Counted from the stretch's first letter, positions 10,821-61,650 are shown. The stretch is 64,000 nt of DNA from IMGVR_UViG_3300037264_008423:124001-188000, one strand, 5' to 3'. Notes: generated from the letters alone by a model not told the origin. A program made the numbers and translations.

Positions 10821-10821
10821 A

Positions 10822-11736: not shown

Positions 11737-11737
11737 A

Positions 11738-12778: not shown

Positions 12779-12795
12779 CACTTTACTTACATGGA

Positions 12796-35939: not shown

Positions 35940-36137
35940 ATGAAGCTTAAATATCCTTTACGGGTTGGATCGAGCCTGCTGGCGGCTGGCACGGAATTGC
36001 GCCCGGCCTCGCTGGAGGAAACACAAAAAGTCTGGCCTGGGATCAGCTATCAACCGGGGAGCAAGCAAGTGGCGGCTTGGCTTCCCCTGGAAACAGACCA
36101 TCCCATTATTTTGCACCGGATACAGGTTGACTTATGA
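35940..36137 (+). CDS. Small hypothetical protein
   Basis: 65 aa, ATGA-coupled to the baseplate gene. Confidence 0.6.
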   Translation: MKLKYPLRVGSSLLAAGTELRPASLEETQKVWPGISYQPGSKQVAAWLPLETDHPIILHRIQVDL

Positions 36138-38461
36138 ACACTGAAAACACACTGCGGTATATCCGCACGGATTACCAGGCGCACAAAGACGCGCTTTTGC
36201 AGCGGGTGCGCGCCCGTTACCCCAGGGTTTGGAACGATTTTTTAAACAACTCCTTCGGCATTTTGCTGGTGGACCTGATTGCCTGGGCCACGGCGACCCT
36301 GGCTTTTCTGATCAACCGGGTTGCGGGAGAGCAGTTTGTCAATACCATGACCCTGCGGGAGTCGGCGGTCAATATCGGCAGTTTTACCGCTTATCAACTG
36401 CGTGGACCGACCGCCGCGACGGTGTTCTGCGAGGCGCGGATCAGCGCGGCGCAACCCGTGGCCACAGTCACCATCAGCCAGGGAACCGTTATTCGCAGCT
36501 CCGAAAACTCCCTGTCTTACGAAGTGGTCAGGGACTACTACATTCTGCCAGGCGATACGACACCGGTAACGCCCATCGTCAACATTTCGCCGTTTTTATC
36601 CGGCGCGCAAGTATTGTCCACCTACGCGCTGGTCACGCCCGGCTCCAGCAATGTGGATCTGCTGGATACGACCATTAACTTGCGGGACTACCTTCAGGCT
36701 GGCCAGGTCTTCAGGGTGGAGGGGGAATCGGAAGGCTATGTCATCCAGGATATTCAAGCCTCGCCGGGCGCGGTCAGCAATAATCGAATTGTATTGACTA
36801 CTCCCTACAGCGGCGCGGTCCAGGCCAGTCTGGCCGCCCTGGCCTACGATCAGCGCATCGAGTGCGTGCAGGGCTTAACCGTTCGGGATGGCTTTGCTTC
36901 TCCGCCCGATCAGGCGCTCTCCTACGTGTTAAAGTTGAGCGCGACGCCGGTGATCGAAGGTTCGGTTTCCGTGGCGGTAAATGGCGCGCCTTGGGCGCGT
37001 GTTACCAGCTTTGCCCGTTCGACCGGTGACGCGCAGGTCTATATGTTCAAAGTGACGGCCTCCGGTCAGCCTTTGGTGATTTTTGGCGATGGCACGCTGG
37101 GCGCGGTTATTCCCACGGAAGCGACTATCCCGGTGACCTACCGGGTGGGCGGCGGGTCCGAGGGCAATCTGTCCCTGAATGCCATCGACACTTCAGTAAC
37201 CGGGCTGCTGGCCTCCGCCAACAATCCGATTACCGTCGCGATTACGAACCAGACTTCCGAGGGAATCGGGGGCCGGGACGCTGAAACGCTCGAAGAGGCG
37301 CGCATTGGCATTCCTGCCGCCACGCGCGCCAATGACCGGGCCGTAACGCTGGACGATTACCAGACTATCGCCATGACCTACCCCAGCGTGGCGTTTGCCC
37401 GGTCGGCGGTGCGCCCGGAAAACGCGCTTTTAGAAGGCAATGTGGTTTTTGTTTACGCCTGGGCCAGGGGGCCTTTAGGCACGCTGGTGAACCTGTCTCC
37501 CGCGCTGAAGCTAGGTCTGGAAGACTACATGCAGACCAAAGCTATCGGCACTGATTTGGTGCGGATTGGCGATGGCACCGCCCGGCCCATGCCGGTGAGT
37601 CTGCGCTTTCGGGTCCTGCATGGCTTCAGCGTCACGGATACGACGCTGTTGGTGCAGGATACGCTCAATCAGCACGTGGACGTTTTGCGACCCGGACAGC
37701 CCGTGCTTTACTCCAACCTGGTGCGCGCCCTGGATGAGGTTTATGGCGTGGATACCGTCACAATGGCCGCGCCCACGAGCGACCTTTTTCCCTCTAATTC
37801 CCTGGAGCTTTTTACCCGGCCTGACGCCAACTACGCTTACGCCCTGGATAAAAATGGCGTGGGCACCCCCACTTTCAGCGCGGTGGACGGGGTAGTGGTT
37901 AGCCAATATCTCGCCCAGTTGCCTGTTTATCCGCTGCAAGCCTGGTCCCTGCGCCTGTTCCTGGGCGTGCGCGAGTTGACGATCCAGCCGGGGATTCTGC
38001 CCGGCTCGGCCCAGCTTTTCGGAGACAATCTGAGCGCGGACCTGGCTTTTCCCTCCACCGTGAATCTGTTGACTGGATCGGTTACCCTGTTTATCAAGGG
38101 CGCGCCGGGTGACCTAGCCCTGAAGCTCGTTCCGGTAAAAGGCTACGCCACGGAGAAGAATATTAACATCTACGTGGGCTATTCCGGCAATACCTCGCAA
38201 ACGAAGCGCCGCGAAATTCGTTCCGCGATCCGGTCCTATGGCGAGGGTCTCGCGGTGGGCGCGCCCCTTTACGCTTCCCAGGTATCCGGCATTGTCGGTT
38301 CCAAGTCCAACTTGACCGAGGTTATCCGCGCGATTAGCGGGGTCACGGCGGTGAATCGGGTCGCGTTGGACGTGCCGGGCAATACCGAGGCCGTGCTCAA
38401 TACGGTGGAGACCGAGTTGCTGCGAATCAAGGACGTGATTCTCAATAACGACGTGGATTAG
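36134..38461 (+). CDS. Baseplate wedge protein (T4 gp6 / baseplate-J-like)
   Basis: Y..TDY...K..L, WNDF, IFGDG..G..P, YRVGGGSEGN, GGRDAETLEEAR, RAVTLDDY. Confidence 0.9.
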   Translation: MNTENTLRYIRTDYQAHKDALLQRVRARYPRVWNDFLNNSFGILLVDLIAWATATLAFLINRVAGEQFVNTMTLRESAVNIGSFTAYQLRGPTAATVFCEARISAAQPVATVTISQGTVIRSSENSLSYEVVRDYYILPGDTTPVTPIVNISPFLSGAQVLSTYALVTPGSSNVDLLDTTINLRDYLQAGQVFRVEGESEGYVIQDIQASPGAVSNNRIVLTTPYSGAVQASLAALAYDQRIECVQGLTVRDGFASPPDQALSYVLKLSATPVIEGSVSVAVNGAPWARVTSFARSTGDAQVYMFKVTASGQPLVIFGDGTLGAVIPTEATIPVTYRVGGGSEGNLSLNAIDTSVTGLLASANNPITVAITNQTSEGIGGRDAETLEEARIGIPAATRANDRAVTLDDYQTIAMTYPSVAFARSAVRPENALLEGNVVFVYAWARGPLGTLVNLSPALKLGLEDYMQTKAIGTDLVRIGDGTARPMPVSLRFRVLHGFSVTDTTLLVQDTLNQHVDVLRPGQPVLYSNLVRALDEVYGVDTVTMAAPTSDLFPSNSLELFTRPDANYAYALDKNGVGTPTFSAVDGVVVSQYLAQLPVYPLQAWSLRLFLGVRELTIQPGILPGSAQLFGDNLSADLAFPSTVNLLTGSVTLFIKGAPGDLALKLVPVKGYATEKNINIYVGYSGNTSQTKRREIRSAIRSYGEGLAVGAPLYASQVSGIVGSKSNLTEVIRAISGVTAVNRVALDVPGNTEAVLNTVETELLRIKDVILNNDVD

Positions 38462-38482
38462 GTTTTCGGTTCTTGGGTGCGT

Positions 38483-39229
38483 ATGGCAAAAACCAAAGCA
38501 CCCGATGTCAGCACCCTGTGCGAAGCGGCCTATCAAAAAGGACTGGCGCTCGGCCAGGCGCAATGCGCCCAGCTTCAGATAGAAAAGATGTCCCTGGTTC
38601 AGCAAGTCAACGGGCTGAACGTGCGCTGCCTGGACCTGCTGCTCGATGTGGACAAACTGCGGTCCAAAGTGGGGCTGCCGTTTCGACGGCGACTGCCGGA
38701 CACGCGCCGGTCCGTTACGCACAAGTTCACCGTGGGCGGCCACGAGGGCTACATGTCGGTCGGCATGTTTGACGATGGCGCTCCGGGCGAGCTTTTCATC
38801 ACGATGGCCAAGGAAGGCTCGACGATTGGCGGCCTCATGGACACGATTGGCACGCTTACCAGCCTGTGCTTGCAGTATGGGGTGGGCATTGAAGTGCTGT
38901 CGGACAAGTTCAGCTACCAGAGATTTGAGCCTTCCGGCTGGACCGGCAACGCGGAAATTCGCAATGCTACGTCCATCATCGATTATGTTTTCCGCTGGCT
39001 CCAGTTTCAGTTTGTCGCGGTCCGTGCCGTCGCGCCTCCCGAAACCGTAAAGGCGCTTGTTGTCGCCACGCCGAAACCGCAGCGGGAGATGGCTTTGGCC
39101 TTGTCCGCAGCGGCGATCAACGAAGTGCAGAACGATAATCCGCCTTGCCCCAAGTGCGGCCACATTACCGAGCGCGCGGGAAAATGCCATCGGTGCCCCA
39201 ACTGCGGCGAACAAACCGGCTGCTCTTAA
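38483..39229 (+). CDS. Stand-alone class II ribonucleotide reductase C-terminal (TSCPD-like) domain with Zn ribbon
   Basis: RRRLPDTRRSVTHKF.VGGHEGY, PGELFI.MAKEGST, RFEPSG, SIIDY.FRWL, CPKCG...C.NCG..TGCS. Confidence 0.85.
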   Translation: MAKTKAPDVSTLCEAAYQKGLALGQAQCAQLQIEKMSLVQQVNGLNVRCLDLLLDVDKLRSKVGLPFRRRLPDTRRSVTHKFTVGGHEGYMSVGMFDDGAPGELFITMAKEGSTIGGLMDTIGTLTSLCLQYGVGIEVLSDKFSYQRFEPSGWTGNAEIRNATSIIDYVFRWLQFQFVAVRAVAPPETVKALVVATPKPQREMALALSAAAINEVQNDNPPCPKCGHITERAGKCHRCPNCGEQTGCS

Positions 39230-39232
39230 GCT

Positions 39233-40225
39233 ATGGAAGCGAGAATTGTTTTTACCACCATCTATCCGCCCACGGCCAGCCTGATGAGCTGGCAAGCGAC
39301 CGGCTTGAAAATGTTCGGGATCGGGGACCGCAAAACACCAGCGGACTGGTCCCTGCCGGGCTGCTGTTTTACGTCGGCTCACGAGCAGGACCTTATGAGC
39401 CACGCTTTTGCGAGCAAGCTGCCCTGGAACCATTACGCGCGAAAAAACCTCGGTTACGTGATGGCGCTCAAGGACGGCGCGGACGCCATTGTGGATGTGG
39501 ACGATGATACCGCGCCCAAACCAAGCTGGTCCCTGCCTGATTTCAGTTTTTACGGGCGCGTGGTTGGCACAGACACCGGTTGGCTTAATGCTTATCGTAT
39601 TTTCATGGATCAATTTGTTTATGTTTGGCCCAGGGGCTTTCCCCTGAGTCAGGTCAGTCGTTCCAGGGATGAGCCGACTGTGTGTTCCATCCAGCGTGTT
39701 AAAGTGGGAGTCTGGCAGGGCTTGGTGGACGTAAACCCGGATGTGGACGCGATTCACCGGCTGATTTTTCCCTTTGATTTTAATTTTGCGGAACGCGCGC
39801 CCATCGCGTTGAACGCAGGCAGCGTTTGTCCTTTCAATTCACAAAATACGGTGATCTGCCGCGCGCTGTTTCCTCTGCTGTATCTGCCGACCACCGTGAG
39901 CTTTCGCTACACGGACATTCTGCGCGGCCTGGTTGCCCAGCCCATTATGTGGAAATATGACTACCGGTTGGCATTCGCGCCGCCCAACGCCATCCAGTGC
40001 CGCAATCCGCATGACTTGATGGCGGATTTCCGGTCGGAAGTGCCCATGTATCTTTCAGCGGAGAGTGTCCCGGCGCTGGTGGGGGAAGCCATTAAAAACG
40101 GTAAAAATATGCTGGACTGCCTGACGCTAGCTTACTACGAACTGGCGCGTAGAAGTATCGTGGAACTCTCGGAGTTGACGCCGCTCTGCGAGTGGTGTGA
40201 AATCATGAAACCTCATTACCTATGA
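39233..40225 (+). CDS. STELLO-like (DUF288) glycosyltransferase
   Basis: GDRKTP.DW, YARKNLGY, DVDDD, WPRGFPL, PDVDAIHRL, PFNSQNT, SFRYTDILRG. Confidence 0.85.
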   Translation: MEARIVFTTIYPPTASLMSWQATGLKMFGIGDRKTPADWSLPGCCFTSAHEQDLMSHAFASKLPWNHYARKNLGYVMALKDGADAIVDVDDDTAPKPSWSLPDFSFYGRVVGTDTGWLNAYRIFMDQFVYVWPRGFPLSQVSRSRDEPTVCSIQRVKVGVWQGLVDVNPDVDAIHRLIFPFDFNFAERAPIALNAGSVCPFNSQNTVICRALFPLLYLPTTVSFRYTDILRGLVAQPIMWKYDYRLAFAPPNAIQCRNPHDLMADFRSEVPMYLSAESVPALVGEAIKNGKNMLDCLTLAYYELARRSIVELSELTPLCEWCEIMKPHYL

Positions 40226-41013
40226 AATACAAATATCTGGCGGTTATCCTGGCGATTAAAAATGACTTCTGTCTGGAGGAAACCATCCGCGAGCTGCGGA
40301 ACCAGGACGTGGCCGATGTGCTTATTATTTCACCGCGCTACTATTGGTCGGATCACGCGCCTCAGTCGGAGGCGGACCTGGAGGAAATCATGGCCATCGC
40401 GCGGCGCGGCGACGCGTCTGTTGTCCAGGCGGACCTGCTCGCCAGCCATAAAACCAACCAGGCGATTTACACCGAGGCCCTTTACCGGAATTATGGCGGT
40501 AAGCTGGCCGCCAAGCGCGGCGCTCAGTATGTCTTGACGGTGGACGCGGACGAGCTGTGGCTGCCCGGCACCCTGGAGGAGATTGACGCGCTGGCCACGG
40601 CGGAGCCGGTGACCGTCTGCCTCCCCGCCATTCCCGTGCTGGGTGTGCCGGGGCTGCCGGTCTTGGGGGCGAAGGACACGATTCTAGTGGCCAGCGCGGT
40701 GGACATCCGGTTTGAGTGGGGACGCGCGACCACGGGACCGCGCGTAATGGGAACGACCCCGGTCCTGCACTTTAGCGCCACGCGGCGCTCCCTCCAGGAA
40801 GTGATTGACAAAAGCCGCAAGTCCGCGCATTACCCCGATCCCACTTATGATTTTGAGGGTTGGATCAGGGATACTCTTCCCCAGGTTCGGGTGGGCATGA
40901 AAAACGTCCACATGTATAAGTCCCCGGACAACATCTGGCCGGAAGTGCGCGCCTGGACCCAAACGGAGCTGGAGCTAATTCCCACCAGCCTGCATCCGTA
41001 TCTTAAGCGGTAA
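40222..41013 (+). CDS. GT-A fold (GT2-like) glycosyltransferase
   Basis: RN.G...YVLTVDADELW DxD motif; LHFS. Confidence 0.7.
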   Translation: MKYKYLAVILAIKNDFCLEETIRELRNQDVADVLIISPRYYWSDHAPQSEADLEEIMAIARRGDASVVQADLLASHKTNQAIYTEALYRNYGGKLAAKRGAQYVLTVDADELWLPGTLEEIDALATAEPVTVCLPAIPVLGVPGLPVLGAKDTILVASAVDIRFEWGRATTGPRVMGTTPVLHFSATRRSLQEVIDKSRKSAHYPDPTYDFEGWIRDTLPQVRVGMKNVHMYKSPDNIWPEVRAWTQTELELIPTSLHPYLKR

Positions 41014-41638
41014 GCACGCTATTCGAGCAAATTTCCAGAAACCCGTCCAGGGTGACAAAAGGACCGGGATGCTCCTTTTGCATCACGGCGCAGACCTCCC
41101 AGCCATCAATCGCGTTGCCCACGGCAGGCGCTTCAAAGACGGCCAAGACCCGGTATTTGCAGGCTTCGGCCAGCCGGTAGTAGTGATGGCAGGTAAAGTA
41201 GTGGTAGCCGTGCCGGGGCCAACTGCCCGTTTTGGGATTATTGAAAAAGAGCAAGCCGTCTGCGCGGCACCAACGATGGCAGTTGGCGCGGCACTGGCAG
41301 TTGGCGCGGCACTGGTAAAGGCGGGGCAAGCCCGGACCCACGTGCTCGCTGGTGCCGAAGTCCGTCACTACGTCAAAGGCATCGTTCCATTCGGATCGGT
41401 TGATAGGTTCCGCCAGGTCAAGGGCAACGGAATCCCGCTCCCCGTTCAGGTCCACGGACGTGTGGTAAGCGCCGTGGGCTTCAAACCACGCTTTGGCGGA
41501 ATAGCCTTCCGGCACGGTGCCGTGGCAATACATCTGCTGCGAACCCAGCTCCATGATCTTCAGGCCGATCCAGTTGCGATTCAACGCTCTTCGGATTTGT
41601 TTTTGAAGGCTATCCAGGCTGAACGGAACCACTCCCAT
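41003..41638 (-). CDS. Class I SAM-dependent methyltransferase-like protein
   Basis: IMELGSQ, SVDLNG, FDVVTDFGTSEHV. Confidence 0.75.
   Translation of the reverse strand: MGVVPFSLDSLQKQIRRALNRNWIGLKIMELGSQQMYCHGTVPEGYSAKAWFEAHGAYHTSVDLNGERDSVALDLAEPINRSEWNDAFDVVTDFGTSEHVGPGLPRLYQCRANCQCRANCHRWCRADGLLFFNNPKTGSWPRHGYHYFTCHHYYRLAEACKYRVLAVFEAPAVGNAIDGWEVCAVMQKEHPGPFVTLDGFLEICSNSVLTA
41277..41315. repeat. Exact 18-bp in-frame tandem duplication
   Basis: TGGCAGTTGGCGCGGCAC x2, giving QCRANC-QCRANC. Confidence 0.9.
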
Positions 41639-41643
41639 AGATT

Positions 41644-42186
41644 TTATTTCCTTTCCAGCACGGTTAAACCGTGGCAGCGACTAAATCGCTCTTTAATTTT
41701 CCATTCTTCAGCCTGGGCAGTAAACTCCTCAATAGCCTGCCACAGTCCTGGTTTAAGGCCACACTGGTCCACGTCGCCAAAAGTGGTGGTATCATGCAGT
41801 AGAATGTAAGTTTTTACCTGTTTGGCGTGCCGGTCTAGCTCAACTTTTAAGTGATCGTAGGTATGGTATGAGTCGATAAAGAGCAAATTCGTAGGTTCAA
41901 TACTAACTTCGGCGGTATTACCGAGCAAGAACTGAAAATCAATCCCCGCCGCCGTCGCGCACGCTTCTACCTCGTCCACTTCAAGTCGCCGGATTACGTC
42001 ATATGAGCGCATGCGCCGGGGATAACCGGCAAGCAGCGCCCAGGTGGAAGTGCAGTCATAGACGCCAAATTCGGTTATGAGCGCGCACTGGCGCGCGTAG
42101 TCGCGGATGACGCGCATGTGGCCCACCATGTCGGTGGGGGCTAGCACTTGTTCTTCAAATTTGCGCTCAAGGGTTGGACAGGTCAT
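41644..42186 (-). CDS. Class I SAM methyltransferase (Methyltransf_24-like)
   Basis: EFGV...ST, LLFIDSYHTYDHL..EL, ILLHDT; start MTCPT. Confidence 0.85.
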   Translation of the reverse strand: MTCPTLERKFEEQVLAPTDMVGHMRVIRDYARQCALITEFGVYDCTSTWALLAGYPRRMRSYDVIRRLEVDEVEACATAAGIDFQFLLGNTAEVSIEPTNLLFIDSYHTYDHLKVELDRHAKQVKTYILLHDTTTFGDVDQCGLKPGLWQAIEEFTAQAEEWKIKERFSRCHGLTVLERK

Positions 42187-42923
42187 GGCGCGCCATGTCC
42201 CTTCTGCCATTCGCGCAGCGATTCCGCGTCTTTTACCGGGTGCCAGATTCCAGGCTTATCCGGTGTAACCGGGTTTGCGTATTGGTAATGAATGCCGGGT
42301 CCTTTCGGGCCGTTGAAGCTCTCCGGTTCAAATCCCGCTACCGCCGCCAGCGATCCGAATCGCAGCTCTGGAGAGCCGGGTGCCTGGCACCAGGGGTTTG
42401 ACTTGAAAGCTTCGGCGATGCCGCTGAGGCATCGCCGGGAAAAGAGGCAGACAATGGGCATCATGCCGCGCAGGCAGTGCGCCAGGCCGTGGTCTCGAAA
42501 TTCCTGATGGCCCGGCGTGTTCTTAAACCAGTAGTCAAAGGTGTTTCCCGCTGGCATGGTCGCTTGGGGTTGACGGGCGTCCATGACACAGGCGGCTACC
42601 GCGTCCCGGTCGTAGCTGGCCCCGTAAAATAATTTGGGGTGCAAGGTAAACCATGTATCATACTCCACGACCATGTAGCGATCAAAATCGATTCGGGCTT
42701 CGGAAAACCACCACTCATAAACTAGGTGGTCCATATGACCCCAGCGCCAACGCGCGTAACCGCTGTAGGTTTCCGGTGTTTGTCCAGGGGGCGGAGGCCG
42801 CTCGCCAAAAGAAAGCGGAATAGCGGTTAGTCCGAGGTCTGCAATGGCGGCCAGGTGTTTGGTGACCAGGGGGTTGTCTAAGGGTTGGTGGTGCAGGAAA
42901 AGCACGCCACATTCTTTATTCAT
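42183..42923 (-). CDS. Putative glycosyltransferase-like protein
   Basis: FDRYMVVEYD DxD-like motif; C-terminal WHPVK; cluster context. Confidence 0.5.
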   Translation of the reverse strand: MNKECGVLFLHHQPLDNPLVTKHLAAIADLGLTAIPLSFGERPPPPGQTPETYSGYARWRWGHMDHLVYEWWFSEARIDFDRYMVVEYDTWFTLHPKLFYGASYDRDAVAACVMDARQPQATMPAGNTFDYWFKNTPGHQEFRDHGLAHCLRGMMPIVCLFSRRCLSGIAEAFKSNPWCQAPGSPELRFGSLAAVAGFEPESFNGPKGPGIHYQYANPVTPDKPGIWHPVKDAESLREWQKGHGAP

Positions 42924-42931
42924 AGGTTTGA

Positions 42932-43504
42932 TTATTTAATGACTACTAATACGTCGTCAAATCGATTTTTGGCGTAGCGGAGATCAACAATGCGCACCGT
43001 GCGCTGCGGATCGAGTGCCTTGAACAGTTCTCGGTCGCGGTCGATGTTTTCAATATCCTCGATGATGTAAATGCCTCCCGGTGCCAGCCGGTGCCGGAAA
43101 TTTTGGTAAATGGCCAGTTGGTCGGCGACCGCGTGGCTGGCATCCTCGATGATGACGTTGAAGAGCAAGCCGCTGAGGTGCTGTTCGACTTGGGCGGGAT
43201 CAACCGCGTTAAAGAGCAGGATACGATGCGTGCCCTCGTCGATCACGGGCCGTAGATTAACCAAGCCCAACGGGTGGTCATTTAAGTCAACGCCATAGAC
43301 GCTGCCATCACTGAAATACTCCTCCAGCGCCCTGAGCGAGGAACCGGTTAATATCCCGATCTCCAGCACACGAGCGCCGGGTAGGCGGTAAGGTGCCAGG
43401 AGTATCTCGTAGGCGTCCACGAAGCTATGGACGGTTGCTTTATCGGAGCCGGAATGACAATCCGGGCCGCCATAACGGCGGAAAATTTCCGCGAGTGTTT
43501 TCAT
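42932..43504 (-). CDS. Class I SAM-dependent (sugar O-)methyltransferase
   Basis: SDK..VH, VLEIGI..GSSL, IIEDASH, GGIYIIEDI. Confidence 0.85.
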   Translation of the reverse strand: MKTLAEIFRRYGGPDCHSGSDKATVHSFVDAYEILLAPYRLPGARVLEIGILTGSSLRALEEYFSDGSVYGVDLNDHPLGLVNLRPVIDEGTHRILLFNAVDPAQVEQHLSGLLFNVIIEDASHAVADQLAIYQNFRHRLAPGGIYIIEDIENIDRDRELFKALDPQRTVRIVDLRYAKNRFDDVLVVIK

Positions 43505-44415
43505 GCGTCTTCCAAGAGCTGCCGCAATTGGCCTGAGTCAGGTCGGCGCAGGTCCAGCAGCGTGCCTTTAATCTCGACCCTGGTAAGATCAAAACTGTAG
43601 CCCAGGTTCTCCGGGTGCGCCAGATTGATGATGGTTCCGCTGGATAACCAGCTCGCCACGCCACCCGAACTGGACCTGTTCTTGACGTAATATTTGCACT
43701 TGGAAAATAGCCAAACCATGAGCGCCGGTTGCAGTCCGCGCTCGAATCCGCTGACGGGTGTGAAGCGTTCCGGGTTTTGCAGGCAGCCAGCGGGTGAGGA
43801 GAGAAATTCCTGGATCATGAAGGCGGAGGGATAGCGCCTCAACAGGGGCAGGAGCACGCCGGTCTCCTCGGCGGTTGCCATAATTCTCAAATTTGGTTCC
43901 CGTGCCAGGATCGCGTCCAGGTAGGGGTAATAGGTTTCGATGGGCAGACGTGGGCGGCCATCGGTCACGCAATCGGTTCCGCGCCAGGTCAAGCCAATTA
44001 GCTGGCTAAAATTCAGGTTGTATTTTTGAACCAGGGCCTCGCCGCGCAAGTTTACCGAATCGCTGAAGATCAAGTTTTTTCGGTAGTAGGCTTTAATCTC
44101 TGTCAAAGGCAACCCCATCAGGCTATGCTGCCCGGCCTCCGGGCAGTTTTCCCACAGCCAGGTAAGATCGCACGGCGGCGGCGGGGCTTTCCGAAATACA
44201 GGTTGAACAAAATACCAGTCATACATGTTGGGACACCCCTTGAACATGGCGGGGTCCTGGTAGGGCTGCAACGAGCGGTTGGGCGCTTGCGGCCAATGAA
44301 GGTAGCCTTGATGGCCCATTTTTTCGGCGGCGTAAAGCTGCCATAGACCACAATAGACCCACGTGGTCAGCGTAGCGCCGGTGTCGGATTTTTCCAAGTA
44401 AACGGTTTTCGTCAT
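43501..44415 (-). CDS. NodZ/fucosyltransferase-like GT-B protein
   Basis: N.YDWYF.QP, IGLTWRGTD, ATAEE, LFSKC...SS; start MTKTVYL. Confidence 0.65.
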   Translation of the reverse strand: MTKTVYLEKSDTGATLTTWVYCGLWQLYAAEKMGHQGYLHWPQAPNRSLQPYQDPAMFKGCPNMYDWYFVQPVFRKAPPPPCDLTWLWENCPEAGQHSLMGLPLTEIKAYYRKNLIFSDSVNLRGEALVQKYNLNFSQLIGLTWRGTDCVTDGRPRLPIETYYPYLDAILAREPNLRIMATAEETGVLLPLLRRYPSAFMIQEFLSSPAGCLQNPERFTPVSGFERGLQPALMVWLFSKCKYYVKNRSSSGGVASWLSSGTIINLAHPENLGYSFDLTRVEIKGTLLDLRRPDSGQLRQLLEDA

Positions 44416-44416
44416 A

Positions 44417-45070
44417 TTAAGGGTCAAAATGTTTGGACAGGTAGGGCCAGAATCCGTGGAATCCGAAGGTCTGAGCAACAAAAAGCCAGGGATTTCCGCC
44501 GTAGGCGTAGCGCATGGCTTGATCCGGGGTTCCGAAGCACAGTCCACTTTGGACCAGTTGCTCGCGCAAATGACAGCTAATCACGCCGTCCTCGTGGCTC
44601 CAATTGTTTCCGGGTGTTCCGTCATAGGAGTGCTGGCCGTCTTTGGGCGGCAATAGCTCCGCCACGCGGTCGAGCAGCGCCTTGGACCGCAGGGAAAAGC
44701 CTCCGCTGCCCACGGAGCTGGACATTAGAGTCTGGTGCTGGATAAATAGGGGACCCAGGTAGTCGCAGAGCAGCCATTTCGGGTCCCATTGGCTGGTGTC
44801 GATGATCCATCCGTCATGCTGCACCACCTGCACGTGGCTGGTATGGATGTGACCGGCGAGGTCTTTGAGCATAAATGCCGAGTAGCCGTTTAGTCCGTCA
44901 AAATGCTGAATGGCCACTTTGTGCGCGTAAGCGGTAGGCAGTGACGTGAAGAGCTTTATGTCTGCAAAGTCGCAGAGCGATTTGCACTTTTCGATTACTC
45001 TTATGGCGCGCTCTACGTTGAAACAGTCCGCGCAGACGAGGGTGACAGAGGCTAGATTAAGTTTGTTCAC
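44417..45070 (-). CDS. DUF5672-like putative glycosyltransferase
   Basis: VQHDGWII..W...DYLG, VGSGGFSLRSK, HED, FGFHG. Confidence 0.8.
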   Translation of the reverse strand: MNKLNLASVTLVCADCFNVERAIRVIEKCKSLCDFADIKLFTSLPTAYAHKVAIQHFDGLNGYSAFMLKDLAGHIHTSHVQVVQHDGWIIDTSQWDPKWLLCDYLGPLFIQHQTLMSSSVGSGGFSLRSKALLDRVAELLPPKDGQHSYDGTPGNNWSHEDGVISCHLREQLVQSGLCFGTPDQAMRYAYGGNPWLFVAQTFGFHGFWPYLSKHFDP

Positions 45071-45795
45071 GAGTTCATGCCTTGGGCAAGCAGAATTACA
45101 CTATCAGAGATGCCGGTCATGTCGTTGGTTTCGCCATATTTATACATACCATTGTTAAAATAGTGGAGATAAACAGGTTCAGAAGTGAGTGTCATGCCGA
45201 GTTTATAGGCCAGGATGCTGGCCACAGACTGGTCATGGCGATGACCCAGGCACCGTTCGTCCTGAGATTCGGCGCGAGTCTGGTTGTCCCACCCGCCGCG
45301 CACGCAATCGGTGTTTAGCACGTAGTGGTTAAACTGCTTCAGGAACTCACGCGCCTGGGGGTGGGATAGACACAGGCCGAAGCAGATGGCCATCAACATG
45401 GGCATCTGTTGCGCCGCGTCCCGGCTGACACCCAAAATATCGAGCGCGCGGTCGTTGGTCCACTGGGCGCAGTTCCAACCCGCAGGGAGAAAGAGGTAGC
45501 CCTTTTCTTCGATCCGGTCAAAGAGGGGTTCCAATGGCTTGATCGCGAAAACGGAAGCGTCAGCCCAAAGCAGGGTGACCATGCGCAAGCTGGCGGCCCG
45601 GTTGAGCGCCGCCACTTTAAACGCGTAGGGTCGGTCCGCGTGGGTGGGGCAGTCCAGTTGGTATTCATCCTGGAAACAAAGAGTGTGCCCGGACCACCGG
45701 TGATCCTCCAGACTGCGGCGCAGCCGGGCCTGTCCACGGGGATACCAGAGGTTAGGCCAGTTGCCGGGCTTGGCAAAATTTAAAACGCATCTCAT
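45067..45795 (-). CDS. Putative glycosyltransferase (GT-A-like)
   Basis: YAFK, LLWADAS, HRHDQSVASIL. Confidence 0.7.
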   Translation of the reverse strand: MRCVLNFAKPGNWPNLWYPRGQARLRRSLEDHRWSGHTLCFQDEYQLDCPTHADRPYAFKVAALNRAASLRMVTLLWADASVFAIKPLEPLFDRIEEKGYLFLPAGWNCAQWTNDRALDILGVSRDAAQQMPMLMAICFGLCLSHPQAREFLKQFNHYVLNTDCVRGGWDNQTRAESQDERCLGHRHDQSVASILAYKLGMTLTSEPVYLHYFNNGMYKYGETNDMTGISDSVILLAQGMNS

Positions 45796-46415
45796 CGGCG
45801 CGCCAGAATCAGATTTTCGCCGTTCATGTGAATCTTTTTAAAACCGTGGGAGGCAACCAGATTTTCCATCGGCTGGGCGCAGCCGTCGTGCTCCACGCAG
45901 ATGACGGCGGTTTCAGTGAGGTAATCCCACGGGAAGTTGGAAAACAGGTCCCAATTGCAGCTTTCCACATCCAGGTTGATGAACTCGAACCGCTTGCCAA
46001 AACGGTTAAACAGCTCCTCCAGAGACACGGATTTCAGCGTGTAGTTTCTGAATTTCACCCCACCGGCACCCGCCGACCACTTCTTCACGTGTTCCGGGTT
46101 GGAAGAGGAAACCGCGTCGCCGCCAGCATCCCAAAAGTCCAGCCAGCCGCCTTCCACGGTGATGGCGGCGTTCACGCAAATGACATTGGGGTTACCCCGG
46201 TGGACCTGGAGCAGGCCGGAGAAGGGCAGGGGTGACGGTTCCACGCAGATCCCCGACCAGCCCATCTCGGCCAGGCGCAGGGTATTGCTAAAGGTTTTGC
46301 CGTCATACGCGCCGATGTCCAGGAAATGGCCTGCGGATGCTTTTTCGGTCAGGAAACCGGCTTGCCGGAGCAGGTCGAGGATGACCGATTCCTCGTTGTT
46401 TTGACTGTAGCTCAT
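45792..46415 (-). CDS. FkbM-family methyltransferase
   Basis: YSQNNEE, FLDIGAYDG..FSNT, GWSGICVEP, INLDVE, ICVEH. Confidence 0.9.
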   Translation of the reverse strand: MSYSQNNEESVILDLLRQAGFLTEKASAGHFLDIGAYDGKTFSNTLRLAEMGWSGICVEPSPLPFSGLLQVHRGNPNVICVNAAITVEGGWLDFWDAGGDAVSSSNPEHVKKWSAGAGGVKFRNYTLKSVSLEELFNRFGKRFEFINLDVESCNWDLFSNFPWDYLTETAVICVEHDGCAQPMENLVASHGFKKIHMNGENLILARR

Positions 46416-47441: not shown

Positions 47442-47560
47442 TCACACCCGAAGACAACCCGGTGAACGAGAAAATGCTGCGCCGCCATGCGCGGCAAGTG
47501 CAGACCAAACTCAAAAGGATGTTTGGCACAGATGAAAGCGGCGAACCGCGCGCCGCTTAA
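47438..47560 (+). CDS. 40-aa hypothetical peptide
   Basis: MITPEDNPVNEKMLRRHARQVQTKLKRMFGTDESGEPRAA; ATGA-coupled; not in the track. Confidence 0.45.
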   Translation: MITPEDNPVNEKMLRRHARQVQTKLKRMFGTDESGEPRAA

Positions 47561-50004
47561 TCCTCGATCCGGTCCAAGGGGGGGCGCTGGCGACGGCGGC
47601 GCAGGCGGTGTCCTGGCCGCTCGCCGCCTTGGTCTTCCTCTGGCCGCCATTCCAGCTTCTCCAGAATGCTCATGGTCATGCTGCGCGGTTCCACGTTGCC
47701 CCGGAAGTGCTGATAGGCGGTCCCATGCCGATTCAGAAATACGAAGTAACGGATGATGTTTTGGGCATACTCGTCGTCCGTGGCGCACAGGCCAATGGCC
47801 ACGTCCACAATTCCCGCCTTCTCAAACGATCCCTGGAAGCTCTTCATGCTGGGCACCGCCAGGTCCACCGTTTCCTTGTTGCACCGGTCGGGCAGGATGA
47901 CCGGGCAGCCAAATTCGGAACCCAGGGCGCGCGCTTCCAGATAAATCTCACCCTGGGCGCGCCACTCGCTGGTCCGCTTGGGATCGGAACTGGGCTTTAC
48001 GGTTTCGGCGAAGTCGATGATGATGGCCTTGGGTTTGACGCCGAAGCGCGCGCTGGCAGTCAGCGCATGGGAGCGGATGTCGCCGCTAATCGTGGCCGCG
48101 CGCGAGGGAAAGCCTTTGATCAGCAGGGTGGAATTAAGCCTTTCGTTGGCCATTTGCAAGGCTTTTTCCGTAAACGTTTTCTTGTTCTGGTAGATCATGT
48201 CAAACGGCAGATCGGTCAGATTGCAGAGACAGCGCACGGCGGCAAGCTCCTGGCTGATCTCGCAGGGATAGTAGAACACGGGGGAGCCGGTGTTCTCGAT
48301 CATGTTCATGGCCAGGTTGATGCAGAAGGCGGTGTTATGGGTGACCGTGAAGTCGCTGTGCAGGTAGCGGCGATTTCCGTCGATTTCTATGCCAAACCAC
48401 TCTTGGTTGCCTACTGGCGCTACTTTTATCGTTGTTCTGTCCGAGGCTTTTTTAGAATCGGTTCCGTGCTTCCTGGCAACCTTGGTTGGAATTTCGCTGA
48501 TTCGGCCCTGAACATAAGTTCTATAGGCGATTGAGAATATCTTTTTTCCTTTTACGATGCATTGGCTGCGAAACGGGCGTATGAAGCTTTTAAAGCCTAA
48601 ACTTCTAGCAAGCCAGCAAGTATCTTCGCATAGCAGTCGGTTTGTGTCTGTAAAAATGAATCCACGGTTATTGGCGTGGCTACCGTCACTGTCAATTAGT
48701 CCGGCCAACAGTCGCAGGCGTGTGGCTTGGCTATTTATTTTGTAAACAAATGGGATATGCTTGTTGCGCAGGAGATTTAAAGCGCGCAGTCCGTTTATGA
48801 TCGGATTTTGGCCTTTGCCCTGTCCAACGAGAGACACCTGCGTGCAGCGCGTTTTCTTTCTATAGGTGGTTACGCGTAACCCTGCCTTAGTGGCAAAGTC
48901 GTGTAGAAAAGGCGTAATTTCCGGGTCATCGTCCCCTACGCTTATAGAAGCTTCATGCGAACTGCCATCCCCAAGCCAAAGACCAAGAAAATAAGGATCT
49001 AACGGCACGCTCACTGCGGGGAAGTCAACTCTGACTTTGTAACCTTTCCAATCTCGGTGGAAGTTTGCTGATTTTTTCGCATAGTCTTCAGCCGTAATCT
49101 CCAGAATTTCACCCAAGTGATACCTGTCTGTAAACCTTCCAACCGGCACCGTGCCCGGTGGTCTTTTCACACAGAGAATGTGGTCGTGGGTGACCGTATA
49201 GCTGTCGCCGTTTGCTTGGGTGACCCGATACATAGGGGCGCAGCCCCGGCCACAACTAAGCACGTTGCGGGGTGTTCCGTCGTCTCCCATGATTTTATCT
49301 CCGGGAGCAAGCTGGCAAATTTGTTTAATGGTGCCGTCAAACATTAGTATCTGCGTGTCAGGGCTTTCACATTTATATCTTTTAGGCGGAGCTAAAATTG
49401 CAATGAGCCAGCCGGGACCCCAGCCAAAGGGCCAGATGCGGTCCAGATCTCCAAAGCCAGTCTGGATGCCGTAGTCGCGCTTGGTCACGGTGTCCAGGAC
49501 CAGTTGGATGTCGCTCTCCCCGGATTTGATGCGGTAGCCAATGTCTTTGAGGTTCTGCCCCACTTTGAGCGCGTCCTCGAACAGTTTGGTAAACCCACCA
49601 GGGGGAGCCTCACCGGTTTTGTGGTAATTGATGGCTTTGTCGCAGGCGATGTAGAGGGCGCGCTCCCGCGCGAACTCCACGGTCTTTTCCACCGCGTAAT
49701 CCACGTCCGACGTGTCCAGCGTGGTGATCTTGCGCACAAAGGCCATGATGTTGCCTTCCTCCTTGGCGTCGGAGGACCGCAAGATGGCGTCGTAAACAAT
49801 TTGGCTGAGGGCTTCAGGCTGAGGGAAACGTCCGTTTTTATTCCAGTAGGCGAAGAGCGCGCGCGCTGTGGCCACACGCGGCACGCTGGTAAAATAGGCG
49901 GAGTTCAACGTTCCCGCGTTGTGCATGAACCTTTCCGGGTGCGCGATAATCGACGCCAGGAGCAGGTCTTGGAACGAACCGTCGTATGAGTATTTTTCAA
50001 ACAT
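47557..50004 (-). CDS. Replicative DnaB/gp41-like helicase, intein-containing
   Basis: TGFGDLD, APPKRYK/T P-loop, IKGFP, IIIDFAE, SFEKAGIVD, NRHG. Confidence 0.85.
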   Translation of the reverse strand: MFEKYSYDGSFQDLLLASIIAHPERFMHNAGTLNSAYFTSVPRVATARALFAYWNKNGRFPQPEALSQIVYDAILRSSDAKEEGNIMAFVRKITTLDTSDVDYAVEKTVEFARERALYIACDKAINYHKTGEAPPGGFTKLFEDALKVGQNLKDIGYRIKSGESDIQLVLDTVTKRDYGIQTGFGDLDRIWPFGWGPGWLIAILAPPKRYKCESPDTQILMFDGTIKQICQLAPGDKIMGDDGTPRNVLSCGRGCAPMYRVTQANGDSYTVTHDHILCVKRPPGTVPVGRFTDRYHLGEILEITAEDYAKKSANFHRDWKGYKVRVDFPAVSVPLDPYFLGLWLGDGSSHEASISVGDDDPEITPFLHDFATKAGLRVTTYRKKTRCTQVSLVGQGKGQNPIINGLRALNLLRNKHIPFVYKINSQATRLRLLAGLIDSDGSHANNRGFIFTDTNRLLCEDTCWLARSLGFKSFIRPFRSQCIVKGKKIFSIAYRTYVQGRISEIPTKVARKHGTDSKKASDRTTIKVAPVGNQEWFGIEIDGNRRYLHSDFTVTHNTAFCINLAMNMIENTGSPVFYYPCEISQELAAVRCLCNLTDLPFDMIYQNKKTFTEKALQMANERLNSTLLIKGFPSRAATISGDIRSHALTASARFGVKPKAIIIDFAETVKPSSDPKRTSEWRAQGEIYLEARALGSEFGCPVILPDRCNKETVDLAVPSMKSFQGSFEKAGIVDVAIGLCATDDEYAQNIIRYFVFLNRHGTAYQHFRGNVEPRSMTMSILEKLEWRPEEDQGGERPGHRLRRRRQRPPLDRIED
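48334..49371 (-). mobile_element. Intein (346 aa) with LAGLIDADG homing endonuclease
   Basis: Begins CESPDTQILMFDG, block B TVTHDH, LGLWLGDG and LLAGLIDSDG, ends VTHN followed by Thr; AT-richer than the extein. Confidence 0.95.
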
Positions 50005-61113: not shown

Positions 61114-61353
61114 TTAGCGCGCGGGTTTTACTTTGCGCCGGGCGCGCGCCTTGCTTTTAGCAATGGGCGCTTGTTGGACATAACTCGGACACTTCGGGTT
61201 TTCGCAGTGACCGCCTTTTTTCACCAACCAGCCGCAAGCGCATTGGCTGAAGCAGTCACATTTTAAGAATCCCTGGGTGCCGCACGTGGGACAGACCACC
61301 GTGGCATCGATCAGGCGCTCAATGGCGCTCAAAGGTTTAGTTTGCATCGGCAT
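61114..61353 (-). CDS. Small Cys-rich protein antisense to the tRNA array
   Basis: CPTC..CDC..CACG..CENPKC. Confidence 0.6.
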   Translation of the reverse strand: MPMQTKPLSAIERLIDATVVCPTCGTQGFLKCDCFSQCACGWLVKKGGHCENPKCPSYVQQAPIAKSKARARRKVKPAR

Positions 61354-61378
61354 ACACTAAGTCATAGAATCAATTTTA

Positions 61379-61463
61379 CCCACAGTCCAGAAAGAGTGGA
61401 GGAAGGTCCCTACGCGCCACAGCGGAAGTAACGGGGCCAGGACCACAGTGGTTTGGACTGGGG
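61379..61463 (+). ncRNA. Rod-like hairpin RNA candidate
   Basis: CAGTCCAGA/TTTGGACTG, GTGG/CCAC, GGTCCC/GGGGCC nested stems with purine-rich internal loops. Confidence 0.45.
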
Positions 61464-61468
61464 TGAAC

Positions 61469-61556
61469 GGGCGTGTGACCGGAGCAGCAATCGGCACGGG
61501 CTGTAAACCCGTCGGCCTAAAAACCTACGCAGGTGCGAGTCCTGCCACGCCCCCCA
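61469..61556 (+). tRNA. tRNA-Tyr(GTA)
   Basis: GGGCGTG/CACGCCC, loop CTGTAAA, long variable arm, unusual C73, CCA. Confidence 0.88.
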
Positions 61557-61561
61557 TTTTA

Positions 61562-61650
61562 AGCGCCGTAGCTCAGAGGCAGAGCAAACCCAAAGCCTGT
61601 AACCAGGTGAGCGGTGGGGATGAGAGGTTCGAGTCCAATCCGGCGCACCA
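61562..61650 (+). ncRNA. tRNA-like RNA with expanded anticodon arm
   Basis: GCGCCG/CGGCGC-ACCA, canonical D arm and GGTTCGAGTCC, but a 24-nt insert in place of the anticodon loop. Confidence 0.6.

What the first reader, a model, noticed from the sequence alone, without database searches (positions are those of the whole stretch)
39233..46415. Nine-gene glycan-building cluster with five GT-like and four methyltransferase genes
Seen: STELLO-like and GT2-like genes on the plus strand converge on a minus-strand operon. That operon holds FkbM, an HRHDQS GT-like gene, DUF5672-like, NodZ-like, a methyltransferase, a DxD protein and two more methyltransferases, which gives six GT-like genes and ten genes in all if the weak 42183 call is counted. 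No nucleotide-sugar synthesis, flippase or TM segments are evident. Inference: cytoplasmic synthesis of a methylated glycan on virion proteins (the fibres are very Ser/Thr-rich) or on DNA, rather than host O-antigen conversion.
Basis: partly seen in the sequence, partly recalled or inferred. Interest (0 to 1): 0.6.

Follow-up and report, generated by a model that had tools for sequence, protein, structure and literature searches.

The report
Phage sugar-adding and methylating gene cluster
A 238-kb uncultured phage carries ten adjacent genes for six sugar-transferring and four methylating enzymes. Four of them form a cassette shared by otherwise unrelated phages, which probably builds a methylated sugar coat, most likely on the virus particle; the target is not shown.

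Summary
Window 39233-46415 contains ten real, tightly packed genes with no membrane segments: two on the plus strand converging on eight on the minus strand.

Strength of the calls:
- Firm: g7 has a fucosyltransferase fold (FUT8 Z 17.5, NodZ Z 15.1). g9 has a retaining GT-A fold (best match the chlorovirus capsid-glycosylating enzyme A64R, Z 14.5). g8 is DUF5672, g10 is FkbM, and g6 is a class I methyltransferase.
- Weaker but consistent: g1 (partial STELLO match), g2 (GT2-like DxD), g5 (GT-A-like, a real gene), g3 and g4 (sub-threshold methyltransferases).

New findings:
- g8-g7-g6-g10 is a conserved cassette, present in 17-21 of 21 loci. It occurs in jumbo phages and in complete 53-68 kb phages that share almost nothing else with this genome. 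Genome GC ranges from 32 to 67%.
- g7 is more conserved than the baseplate and helicase genes.
- No g7 relative turned up in a narrow pattern scan of 185,579 prokaryotic species genomes.
- One relative places a true GDP-mannose 4,6-dehydratase next to the cassette, which points to GDP-6-deoxyhexose donors.
- DNA glycosylation is disfavoured because no hydroxymethylase is present.

The acceptor is unproven. Virion proteins are the most likely target (about 0.4), and host envelope glycans are not excluded.

The parts
39233..40225 (+). g1, 330 aa, STELLO-like putative glycosyltransferase. Accessory part, present in 10 of 21 loci.
   Evidence: PF03385 28.2 bits (cut-off 27.8) for residues 225-308 against model positions 1-85. 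Four orthologues score 38-45 bits over the same partial region. Homologues occur in Synechococcus phage S-T4 and in 735-kb huge phages.
40222..41013 (+). g2, 263 aa, GT2-like (GT-A) putative glycosyltransferase with an invariant D-A-D-E motif. Found only in the closest relatives, plus one fused paralogue in the same genome.
   Evidence: PF00535 E=0.022, sub-threshold. Orthologues give E 0.048-0.08 at the same motif. D108 and D110 are invariant in alignment A7. The paralogue lies at G000 219725-221272.
41003..41638 (-). g3, 211 aa, probable class I SAM methyltransferase (weak call). It carries an 18-bp tandem duplication at 41276-41311.
   Evidence: No Pfam hit for the window copy. Two orthologues hit Methyltransf_11/12 at E 0.015-0.05 over the same segment. 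A glycine-containing motif I and a D-x-x-x-x-G-T-S-E-H-V block are read directly from alignment A4.
41644..42186 (-). g4, about 180 aa, CmcI/Methyltransf_24-like sugar O-methyltransferase (probable).
   Evidence: RMNT_CmcI E=0.0022. Orthologues hit CmcI at 6e-4 and Methyltransf_24 at 7e-4. The start at M9 gives an ATGA overlap with the g5 stop.
42183..42923 (-). g5, 246 aa, GT-A-like putative glycosyltransferase (E-x-D plus a C-terminal His). Unique to this genome among the 21 loci.
   Evidence: Homologues at 52-54% identity. 62 representatives in the large library. D89 and H228 are invariant and E87 nearly so. The Atlas model matches DUF707/DUF3405/GT2/Galactosyl_T clusters at TM 0.65-0.73, which is a lead only. 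No Pfam hit in 43 members.
42932..43504 (-). g6, 190 aa, class I SAM methyltransferase (Methyltransf_23/24 type). Core cassette member, directly or closely downstream of g7 in 20 of 21 loci.
   Evidence: Methyltransf_23 27.6 bits against 27. phrog_21658 E=1.1e-19. Census.
43501..44415 (-). g7, 304 aa, GT-B glycosyltransferase of the fucosyltransferase superfamily. It is the most conserved gene of the cassette (21 of 21 loci).
   Evidence: AF2 model with pLDDT 95.3. VIA-align: FUT8 Z 17.5, NodZ 15.1, POFUT2 14.0, AtFUT1 13.9, POFUT1 13.5. Foldseek: NodZ 1.5e-7. Viral fucosyltransferases match in BFVD. Invariant W144-R145-G146-x-D148 and N246-R247-S-S. 373 homologues at 54-69% identity. 2 of 53 members hit Pfam NodZ at 3e-4.
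44417..45070 (-). g8, 217 aa, DUF5672 (GT-A-type) putative glycosyltransferase. Core cassette member, directly or closely upstream of g7 in 20 of 21 loci.
   Evidence: PF18922 E=3.9e-10, 40 bits against 24.4. Homologues lie in the sugar islands of Synechococcus phages, where one is annotated as a GT-A type domain. Census.
45067..45795 (-). g9, 242 aa, GT-A fold glycosyltransferase of retaining type (HRHDQS motif). Accessory part, present in 7 of 21 loci.
   Evidence: AF2 model with pLDDT 96.8. VIA-align: PBCV-1 A64R Z 14.5, glycogenin 13.8, BoGT6a 13.7, Mimivirus R699 11.7. Foldseek: BoGT6a 1e-5. 369 homologues. No Pfam hit in 52 members.
45792..46415 (-). g10, 207 aa, FkbM-family methyltransferase. 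Core cassette member, present in 17 of 21 loci.
   Evidence: TIGR01444 49 bits against 37.7. PF05050 28.1 bits against 22.7. Census.
38477..39229 (+). TSCPD-domain protein. It sits in conserved order between baseplate J and g1 in the three closest genomes; whether it has a role in the cluster is unknown.
   Evidence: PF12637 E=7.9e-12. Orthologues at 70% identity in L002, L003 and L006, in the same position.
36134..38461 (+). Baseplate wedge (Baseplate_J) gene heading the same-strand run baseplate-TSCPD-g1-g2. Listed as context, not as part of the enzymology.
   Evidence: phrog_219 8.4e-31 and PF04865. The gene order is kept in L002, L003 and L006.

Best explanation
The cluster is a soluble, cytoplasmic glycan-building and glycan-capping enzyme set.

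The conserved core is g8 (DUF5672), g7 (fucosyltransferase fold), g6 (Methyltransf_24 type) and g10 (FkbM). It adds two sugars, one probably a GDP-activated 6-deoxyhexose such as fucose, and O-methylates them. This resembles the NodZ/NoeI pair that makes 2-O-methylfucose on Nod factors. In this phage four more transferases (g1, g2, g5, g9) and two more methyltransferases (g3, g4) extend or branch the glycan. Donors come from the host, because this genome has no sugar-nucleotide genes.

The most likely acceptor is one or more of the phage's own virion proteins, glycosylated in the cytoplasm before or during assembly. That would give a methylated glycan coat, as on chlorovirus capsids and mycobacteriophage capsids and tail tubes.

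Shown: gene structure, folds, family membership, cassette conservation, and the link to GDP-mannose dehydratase in a relative.
Inferred: donor identity, order of reactions, O-methylation of sugars, and the acceptor.

Confidence that it is a glycan-building and methylating set is about 0.85. Confidence in the full statement, including the virion acceptor, is about 0.4.
For: - Folds: g7 matches FUT8, NodZ and POFUT at Z 13.5-17.5. g9 matches A64R, glycogenin and GT6 at Z 13.7-14.5.
- Families: DUF5672, FkbM and Methyltransf_23/24.
- The genes are translationally coupled and have no membrane segments.
- Cassette census: g7 21/21, g6 20/21, g8 20/21, g10 17/21.
- In relative L004 the gene after g7-g6-g4 is a true Gmd (TIGR01472, 540 bits against 415). 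A LegC/DegT-type aminotransferase, a GNAT and a second FkbM are also present.
- Virion link: g1-g2 follow baseplate J on the same strand in three genomes. In the small phages the cassette lies just upstream of GP3_package and the putative terminase.
- The g7 family looks phage-restricted: no relative in 185,579 prokaryote species genomes by pattern scan. The g9 Atlas clusters are 91-100% viral.
- g7 keeps 60% identity where baseplate and helicase fall to 41%, so it behaves like a core phage function.
- Precedents: PBCV-1 A064R combines rhamnosyltransferases with a 2-O-methyltransferase on the capsid glycan (PMC7019647). Mycobacteriophage capsid and tail-tube glycans are cited in PMC12619734.
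Against: - No acceptor was identified.
- Complete cassette-bearing phages G001 and G004 share no virion protein with this genome at blastp 1e-5. A sequence-conserved phage acceptor is therefore excluded, and a simple motif or a sugar primer must be assumed.
- There are no expression data: only one DNA run holds the locus.
- Promoter and terminator scans are at chance level.
- Soluble glycosyltransferases of the same kinds also act on lipid-linked envelope precursors.
- Four of the ten family calls are sub-threshold.
Confidence: 0.4

Rival explanations
1. Host envelope remodelling. The enzymes act at the cytoplasmic face on undecaprenyl-linked O-antigen, capsule or protein-O-glycan precursors, or on lipopolysaccharide core. 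The host's own flippases export the altered glycan. This would mask receptors, giving superinfection exclusion or less loss of progeny on cell debris.
For: Soluble GT-A and GT-B enzymes with FkbM or CmcI methyltransferases are typical of bacterial surface-glycan clusters (established knowledge). Homologues of g8 and g1 in cultured Synechococcus phages sit in islands annotated with lipopolysaccharide-type genes, and authors suggest host-surface modification for such genes (PMC12801897). The genome also has a GT9 heptosyltransferase-like gene.
Against: - The cassette is kept at 50-60% identity in phages whose genomes span 32-67% GC, so their hosts and surface glycans must differ.
- The g7 and g9 families look phage-only.
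- There is no initiating phosphoglycosyltransferase, flippase, polymerase or GtrA/B-type gene, and no membrane segment.
- g7 evolves more slowly than core genes, which is unlike an accessory host-conversion gene.
Confidence: 0.27
2. DNA hypermodification. The transferases glycosylate a modified base in phage DNA, and the methyltransferases cap the sugar, protecting the genome from restriction and CRISPR.
For: Phage DNA is an acceptor common to all the unrelated phages that carry the cassette. In small phages the cassette lies next to replication genes (NinG, primase-helicase). Diverse DNA glycans made by viral glycosyltransferases are known (Pyle et al. 2024, cited in PMC12619734).
Against: - No ThyA-type hydroxymethylase in G000 (96% complete) or in the complete G001 and G004.
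- No C5-methylase and no Tet/JBP hit in G000; the Tet/JBP control was silent, so that blank is weak.
- Known DNA glycosylation needs a hydroxyl handle on the base.
- The fucosyltransferase-fold, DUF5672 and FkbM families are not known DNA modifiers (established knowledge).
Confidence: 0.06
3. Another soluble acceptor. The enzymes glycosylate a host protein, a small molecule or a signalling nucleotide, as host takeover or counter-defence.
For: The acceptor must be common to very different phage-host pairs. Soluble glycosyltransferases that modify host proteins exist; for example EarP appears among the weaker fold matches at Z 6-7.
Against: Six transferases and four methyltransferases in one operon imply an oligosaccharide, not a single regulatory sugar. 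Methyl capping is typical of exposed structural glycans (established knowledge). No defence or anti-defence context was seen.
Confidence: 0.12

Closest known systems
Chlorovirus PBCV-1 capsid (Vp54) glycosylation enzymes (A064R, A075L, A071R, A111/114R)
   Same: Virus-encoded soluble glycosyltransferases plus a sugar 2-O-methyltransferase build a methylated, 6-deoxyhexose-rich glycan on the capsid in the cytoplasm (PMC7019647). The A64R domain is the best solved-structure match of g9 (Z 14.5).
   Different: That is a eukaryotic virus, and its enzymes are multi-domain fusions scattered over the genome. There is no sequence-level homology here (11% identity). The acceptor for this cluster is unknown.
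NodZ/NoeI of rhizobia (Nod-factor fucosylation and 2-O-methylation)
   Same: A NodZ-fold GDP-fucose transferase is paired with an FkbM-family methyltransferase. g7 matches NodZ at Z 15.1 and Foldseek 1.5e-7, and g10 is FkbM.
   Different: g7 does not reach the Pfam NodZ threshold; only 2 of 53 family members hit it weakly. The acceptor there is a chitooligosaccharide. That NoeI belongs to the FkbM family is recalled from knowledge and was not tested here.
Mycobacteriophage virion glycosylation (Freeman et al. 2023, as cited in PMC12619734)
   Same: Phage-encoded glycosyltransferases decorate capsid and tail-tube subunits of tailed phages. This is the only demonstrated case of the mechanism proposed here.
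   Different: Those are different enzyme families in small clusters of two or three genes, in Actinobacteria phages. The paper itself could not be read here.
Sugar islands of large cyanomyophages (RN05-S, S-B05, S-T4, S-SCSM2R)
   Same: They contain DUF5672 and STELLO-like homologues (27-31% identity) together with FkbM, fucosyltransferases (GT11, O-FucT) and GDP-mannose dehydratase. S-SCSM2R has 13 glycosyltransferases (PMC12801897).
   Different: No g7 or g9 homologue was found in 50,697 phage records. Those islands carry full sugar-nucleotide pathways. Their function is also unknown.
T-even phage DNA glucosylation and related DNA glycan systems
   Same: Phage-encoded GT-B transferases acting in the cytoplasm.
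   Different: Those systems need dCMP or dUMP hydroxymethylase, or TET. None was found here.

Membership tests
Fucosyltransferase superfamily (GT23 NodZ/FUT8, GT65/68 POFUT, GT37), for g7 | Two-domain GT-B variant fold shared by these families | tested here: met
   FUT8 Z 17.5 (237 aligned, rmsd 2.9), NodZ Z 15.1, POFUT2 14.0, AtFUT1 13.9, POFUT1 13.5. The next fold class (GT9) scores 10.5. Foldseek probability 1.00.
Fucosyltransferase superfamily, for g7 | Conserved Arg-containing motif (H-x-R-R/x-x-D type) that binds the GDP phosphates, plus a C-terminal Ser-rich loop | tested here: inconclusive
   W144-R145-G146-x-D148 and N246-R247-S248-S249 are invariant or nearly so in 53 sequences. That they correspond to the FUT8 and NodZ motifs is read by eye from memory of those motifs. 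No residue-level structural alignment was available.
Pfam NodZ (PF05830) / O-FucT sequence families, for g7 | HMM score above the curated threshold | tested here: not met
   No Pfam or NCBIfam hit for g7. Only 2 of 53 family members hit NodZ, best E 2.9e-4. A profile search against PDB was blank.
Fucosyltransferase superfamily, for g7 | Uses a GDP-activated sugar donor | not testable with these tools
   Context only: a true Gmd lies beside the cassette in relative L004.
GT-A retaining glycosyltransferases (GT6/GT8/GT34 type), for g9 | Single Rossmann-like GT-A fold | tested here: met
   A64R Z 14.5, glycogenin 13.8, BoGT6a 13.7, LgtC 11.7. 216 Foldseek matches at E<=0.001.
GT-A retaining glycosyltransferases, for g9 | DxD metal/nucleotide motif | tested here: inconclusive
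   The family has W77-x-D79-A-S with only one invariant Asp. Metal-independent GT6 enzymes also lack DxD (title of PDB 4ayj).
DUF5672 (PF18922), for g8 | HMM score above the curated threshold | tested here: met
   40 bits against 24.4, covering 144 of 164 model positions.
STELLO (PF03385), for g1 | HMM score above threshold over the domain | tested here: inconclusive
   The score passes (28.2 against 27.8; orthologues 38-45 bits), but only model positions 1-85 to 1-105 of 387 are matched, by the C-terminal part of the protein.
FkbM methyltransferases (TIGR01444/PF05050), for g10 | HMM score above the curated threshold | tested here: met
   49 bits against 37.7; 28.1 bits against 22.7.
Class I SAM methyltransferases, for g6, g4 and g3 | HMM score above threshold | tested here: inconclusive
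   g6 is met (Methyltransf_23 27.6 against 27; phrog_21658 1e-19). g4 and its orthologues are sub-threshold for CmcI and Methyltransf_24 (E 6e-4 to 2e-3). g3 orthologues give E 0.015-0.05 only. Profile-profile comparison of g3 and g4 with g6 was blank.
GT2 (PF00535), for g2 | HMM score above threshold | tested here: not met
   15.1 bits against 23.3. Orthologues are also sub-threshold. Only the DxD-containing strand is recognisable.
Phage DNA glycosylation systems (T4-like, TET-dependent) | A base hydroxymethylase (ThyA family), or a C5-methylase plus TET, in the same genome | tested here: not met
   PF00303, PF00145 and PF12851 are absent from G000. PF00303 is absent from the complete G001 and G004. 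The control for PF12851 was silent.
Seroconversion / O-antigen modification cassettes (Gtr type, Wzx/Wzy-dependent) | Integral-membrane flippase or GT-C transferase | tested here: not met
   No hydrophobic 19-residue window above 1.95 in any of the ten proteins, and no such Pfam family.
Virion protein glycosylation systems (mycobacteriophage type) | Glycan demonstrated on capsid or tail proteins | not testable with these tools
   Needs virions. The phage is known only from one sediment metagenome run.

The most novel reading that the evidence does not exclude
g8-g7-g6-g10 is a phage-restricted, anciently resident four-gene cassette. It is kept in unrelated tailed-phage lineages (53 kb to 260 kb genomes, 32-67% GC) and installs one common methylated deoxyhexose glycan on virions. 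That would make it a general 'glycan shield' system of environmental phages, built from enzyme families (g7, g9, g5) that no curated database covers yet.
Probability: 0.3. Interest if true: 0.7.

Novelty: new variant of a known kind. Interest (0 to 1): 0.52.

Why it matters
Virion glycosylation in tailed phages has been shown only for a few mycobacteriophages. This cassette has hundreds of homologues and sits in phage lineages with very different genomes and hosts. If it decorates virions, glycan coats on phages would be far more common than is thought. That would bear on receptor binding, particle stability, grazing, and immune recognition in phage therapy.

The work also defines three sizeable protein families without Pfam coverage and assigns them folds: a fucosyltransferase-fold GT-B and two GT-A families. 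It yields a compact four-gene unit that can be tested by heterologous expression.

Tried and rejected
- DNA and protein searches of the cluster, g7 and g9 against 50,697 phage records were blank.
- A single-protein pattern scan of viral contigs was blank. The alignment-based scan then worked.
- phmmer and profile searches against PDB sequences were blank or chance-level for g3, g5, g7, g9 and alignments A1-A4, A6 and A7.
- Profile-profile comparisons were uninformative (g3 vs g6, g4 vs g6, g5 vs g9, g5 vs g2; probability below 2%). I draw no conclusion from them.
- Pfam scans of 52 g9-family and 43 g5-family members gave nothing.
- The promoter and terminator scan was at chance level.
- The run search found one DNA run and no RNA.
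- The 'moraphage' jumbo lineage (PMC12619734) was considered as this phage's group and rejected. Those phages are placed by a family B polymerase tree and have predicted Bacteroidota hosts. This genome encodes a family A polymerase.
- Recent horizontal transfer of the cassette was rejected, because the cassette's GC equals each genome's GC.
- Freeman et al. 2023 could not be read.
- No complex prediction was run, because no binding claim is made.

Full report
**Context.** The window is positions 124001-188000 of a 238,436-bp IMG/VR virus record that CheckV rates 96% complete. GC is about 57%. It is a tailed jumbo phage. Around the finding lie:
- a baseplate wedge (Baseplate_J) gene
- a TSCPD protein
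- an M42-like peptidase
- a DnaB helicase interrupted by an intein
- a family A DNA polymerase
- an NAD-dependent ligase

Its polymerase is under 30% identical to any cultured phage's. The only public run holding the locus is one sediment metagenome.

**Observation.** Ten ORFs fill 39233-46415 with almost no spacing.
- All have elevated third-position GC (0.57-0.76).
- None has a hydrophobic stretch long enough for a membrane helix.
- ATGA or GTGA start/stop overlaps link g1/g2, g10/g9, g9/g8, g7/g6 and g5/g4.
- g2 and g3 converge with an 11-nt overlap.
- Orthologue alignments move the start of g7 to 44415 and the start of g4 to 42186.

It has homologues at 52-54% identity and 62 cluster representatives in an exhaustive search of 1.8 billion proteins.

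**What each gene is: firm calls.**
- g10 is FkbM (TIGR01444, 49 bits against 37.7).
- g8 is DUF5672 (40 bits against 24.4).
- g6 is a class I methyltransferase (Methyltransf_23 at threshold; phrog_21658 1e-19).
- g7 had no family hit. It has 373 homologues at 54-69% identity, and an AlphaFold model from 53 of them reached pLDDT 95.3.
  - The fold is the fucosyltransferase GT-B variant: FUT8 Z 17.5, NodZ 15.1, POFUT2 14.0, plant FUT1 13.9, POFUT1 13.5. These stand clear of the next class, GT9, at 10.5.
  - Foldseek gives NodZ 1.5e-7.
  - Viral fucosyltransferases of giant viruses and cyanophages match in BFVD.
  - Invariant W-R-G-x-D and N-R-S-S blocks look like the GDP-binding motifs of these families, but I could not superpose residues.
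  - Two of 53 family members touch Pfam NodZ at E 3e-4.
- g9 has 369 homologues and no Pfam hit in 52 members. It modelled at pLDDT 96.8 and is a retaining-type GT-A enzyme. Its top matches are the PBCV-1 capsid-glycosylating A64R domain (Z 14.5), glycogenin (13.8) and BoGT6a (13.7).

**What each gene is: weaker calls.**
- g1 passes the STELLO threshold, as do four orthologues (38-45 bits). Only its C-terminal 85-105 residues match, and only to the first quarter of the model.
- g2 gives only sub-threshold GT2 hits, centred on an invariant D-A-D-E motif.
- g5 has an invariant Asp in an E-x-D motif and an invariant C-terminal His. Atlas structural neighbours are GT-A families (DUF707, DUF3405, GT2, Galactosyl_T; TM 0.65-0.73). 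That is a lead, not a test.
- g4 and its orthologues give repeated sub-threshold CmcI and Methyltransf_24 hits. g3 orthologues give Methyltransf_11/12 hits at E 0.015-0.05.

The tally of six transferase-like and four methyltransferase-like genes stands, with five firm calls and five probable ones.

**The conserved cassette.** I collected 20 further loci:
- five from jumbo-phage contigs of 209-259 kb
- fifteen from IMG/VR

Presence across the 21 loci, including the window:

| Gene | Loci |
|---|---|
| g7 | 21/21 |
| g6 | 20/21 |
| g8 | 20/21 |
| g10 | 17/21 |
| g1 | 10/21 |
| g9 | 7/21 |
| g2, g3, TSCPD | 3/21 (the window and its two closest relatives) |
| g4 | 3/21 |
| g5 | the window only |

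The core is therefore DUF5672 transferase, fucosyltransferase-fold transferase, Methyltransf_24-type methyltransferase and FkbM. This phage has an expanded version.

g7 is unusually constrained. Against L007 and L008 it keeps 60-61% identity, while helicase and baseplate fall to 41-42%.

**The cassette crosses phage lineages.** Many of the IMG/VR loci come from small phages.
- G004 is a complete 53,485-bp genome with terminal repeats and 32% GC. G001 is a complete 68,335-bp genome with 36.5% GC.
- A blastp comparison of all their ORFs with all ORFs of the 238-kb genome finds only three things: the cassette (g8, g7, g6, g10, g1 and a GT2-like domain), a multi-copy small ORF, and one weak hit. 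No virion protein is shared.
- In each genome the cassette has that genome's GC (0.565, 0.357, 0.314). It is therefore a long-term resident, not a recent import.
- In the small phages it lies between NinG/primase-helicase genes and the small-terminase-like GP3_package gene.
- A pattern scan of one genome for each of 185,579 prokaryotic species found no g7 relative. That scan used only three peptide patterns, so distant relatives could be missed.

**Donors.** This genome lacks Epimerase/dehydratase, NTP_transferase and DegT families, so it must use host nucleotide sugars.

In relative L004 the gene directly after the g7-g6-g4 orthologues is a true GDP-mannose 4,6-dehydratase (TIGR01472, 540 bits against a cut-off of 415). 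A LegC/DegT-type aminotransferase, a GNAT acetyltransferase and a second FkbM are also present. This fits a GDP-6-deoxyhexose donor for the fucosyltransferase-fold enzyme.

**More glycan genes in the same genome, outside the window.**
- A g2 paralogue fused to a second GT2-like domain (219725-221272), near a GT9 heptosyltransferase-like gene (222165-223424).
- A g6 paralogue (196176-197180) beside a GT1/GT4-like gene.
- Two tandem Methyltransf_24 genes (102437-103719).

The phage invests in roughly nine transferases and seven or eight methyltransferases.

**Target.**
- DNA is unlikely. No ThyA-family hydroxymethylase occurs in this genome or in the two complete small phages. This genome has no C5-methylase and no Tet/JBP hit, though the Tet/JBP control was silent.
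- A sequence-conserved phage protein is excluded as acceptor.
- What remains:
  - virion proteins recognised through a simple motif or a primer sugar
  - host envelope precursors
  - some other soluble acceptor
- I favour virions, for these reasons:
  - g1-g2 run on from the baseplate gene in three genomes.
  - The cassette abuts packaging genes in small phages.
  - The key families appear phage-only.
  - g7 behaves like a core gene.
  - The closest working precedents are virus-encoded capsid glycosylation with sugar methylation in chloroviruses (PMC7019647) and capsid/tail-tube glycosylation in mycobacteriophages (cited in PMC12619734).
- The host-envelope reading cannot be excluded. Lack of membrane segments is no argument against it, and authors of cyanophage genomes with related islands favour it (PMC12801897).
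They have about 20% Ser+Thr against a median of 11%, with weak tail-fibre and virion-protein hits. Nothing ties them to the cluster.

**Novelty and verdict.** Clusters of glycosyltransferases and methyltransferases in large phages are known from annotation (PMC12801897). What is new:
- the fold-level identification of three families without database coverage
- the definition of a four-gene cassette conserved across unrelated phage lineages
- the evidence that it is old, constrained and possibly phage-specific

I rate it a new variant of a known kind, of moderate interest, with the acceptor as the open and testable question.

Noticed in passing
window 47557-50004 (-): The DnaB-like replicative helicase is interrupted by an intein with Hint and LAGLIDADG homing-endonuclease domains (Hom_end_hint 1.4e-15, Hom_end 7e-8). 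Orthologues in L002 and L006 are only 477-479 aa, so they lack it.
   Followed up: partly
window 41276-41311 (-), inside g3: A near-perfect 18-bp tandem duplication (17 of 18 bases identical) adds six residues, repeating a Cys-Arg-Ala-Asn-Cys motif. Both orthologues lack it.
   Followed up: partly
G000:C1 219725-223424, 196176-198146 and 102437-103719 (outside the window; L011, L010, L009): Further glycan genes in the same genome: a two-domain GT2-like protein paralogous to g2, a GT9 heptosyltransferase-like gene, a g6 paralogue with a 180-aa N-terminal extension next to a GT1/GT4-like gene, and two tandem Methyltransf_24 genes.
   Followed up: partly
G000:C1 50630-51124 (+), outside the window; G001 10793-11404, 14132-14605, 61221-61625, 67265-67741: A small ORF (164 aa) of this genome has four copies at 37-42% identity in the unrelated 68-kb phage G001. 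Apart from the cassette it is almost the only thing the two genomes share. It may be a mobile element such as a homing endonuclease.
   Followed up: no
window 38477-39229 (+): A stand-alone TSCPD-domain protein (the domain otherwise sits at the C-terminus of class II ribonucleotide reductases; phrog_84 hit) is kept between baseplate J and the STELLO-like gene in three genomes. The listed ORF (250 aa, GTG start) is longer than its orthologues (135-177 aa), so the true start may lie further in.
   Followed up: partly
window 6000-14957 (-): A run of ORFs with about 20% Ser+Thr (genome median 11%). Three have weak PHROG hits to tail-fibre or virion structural proteins. They are candidate glycan acceptors but are unlinked to the cluster.
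   Followed up: partly
L008 5320-6465 (-): A relative's jumbo-phage contig carries an IS605 OrfB/TnpB (Cas12f-like) gene 3.5 kb from its cassette.
   Followed up: no
L004 and L007: One NCBI assembly (GCA_040384425.1) holds two different large phage contigs, of 259 kb and 209 kb. Each has its own g7 cassette in a different arrangement.
   Followed up: no
window 38114-39757 (-): A 547-aa open frame runs antisense across the TSCPD gene and the start of g1. It is probably a shadow frame of GC-rich coding DNA; it was not analysed further.
   Followed up: no
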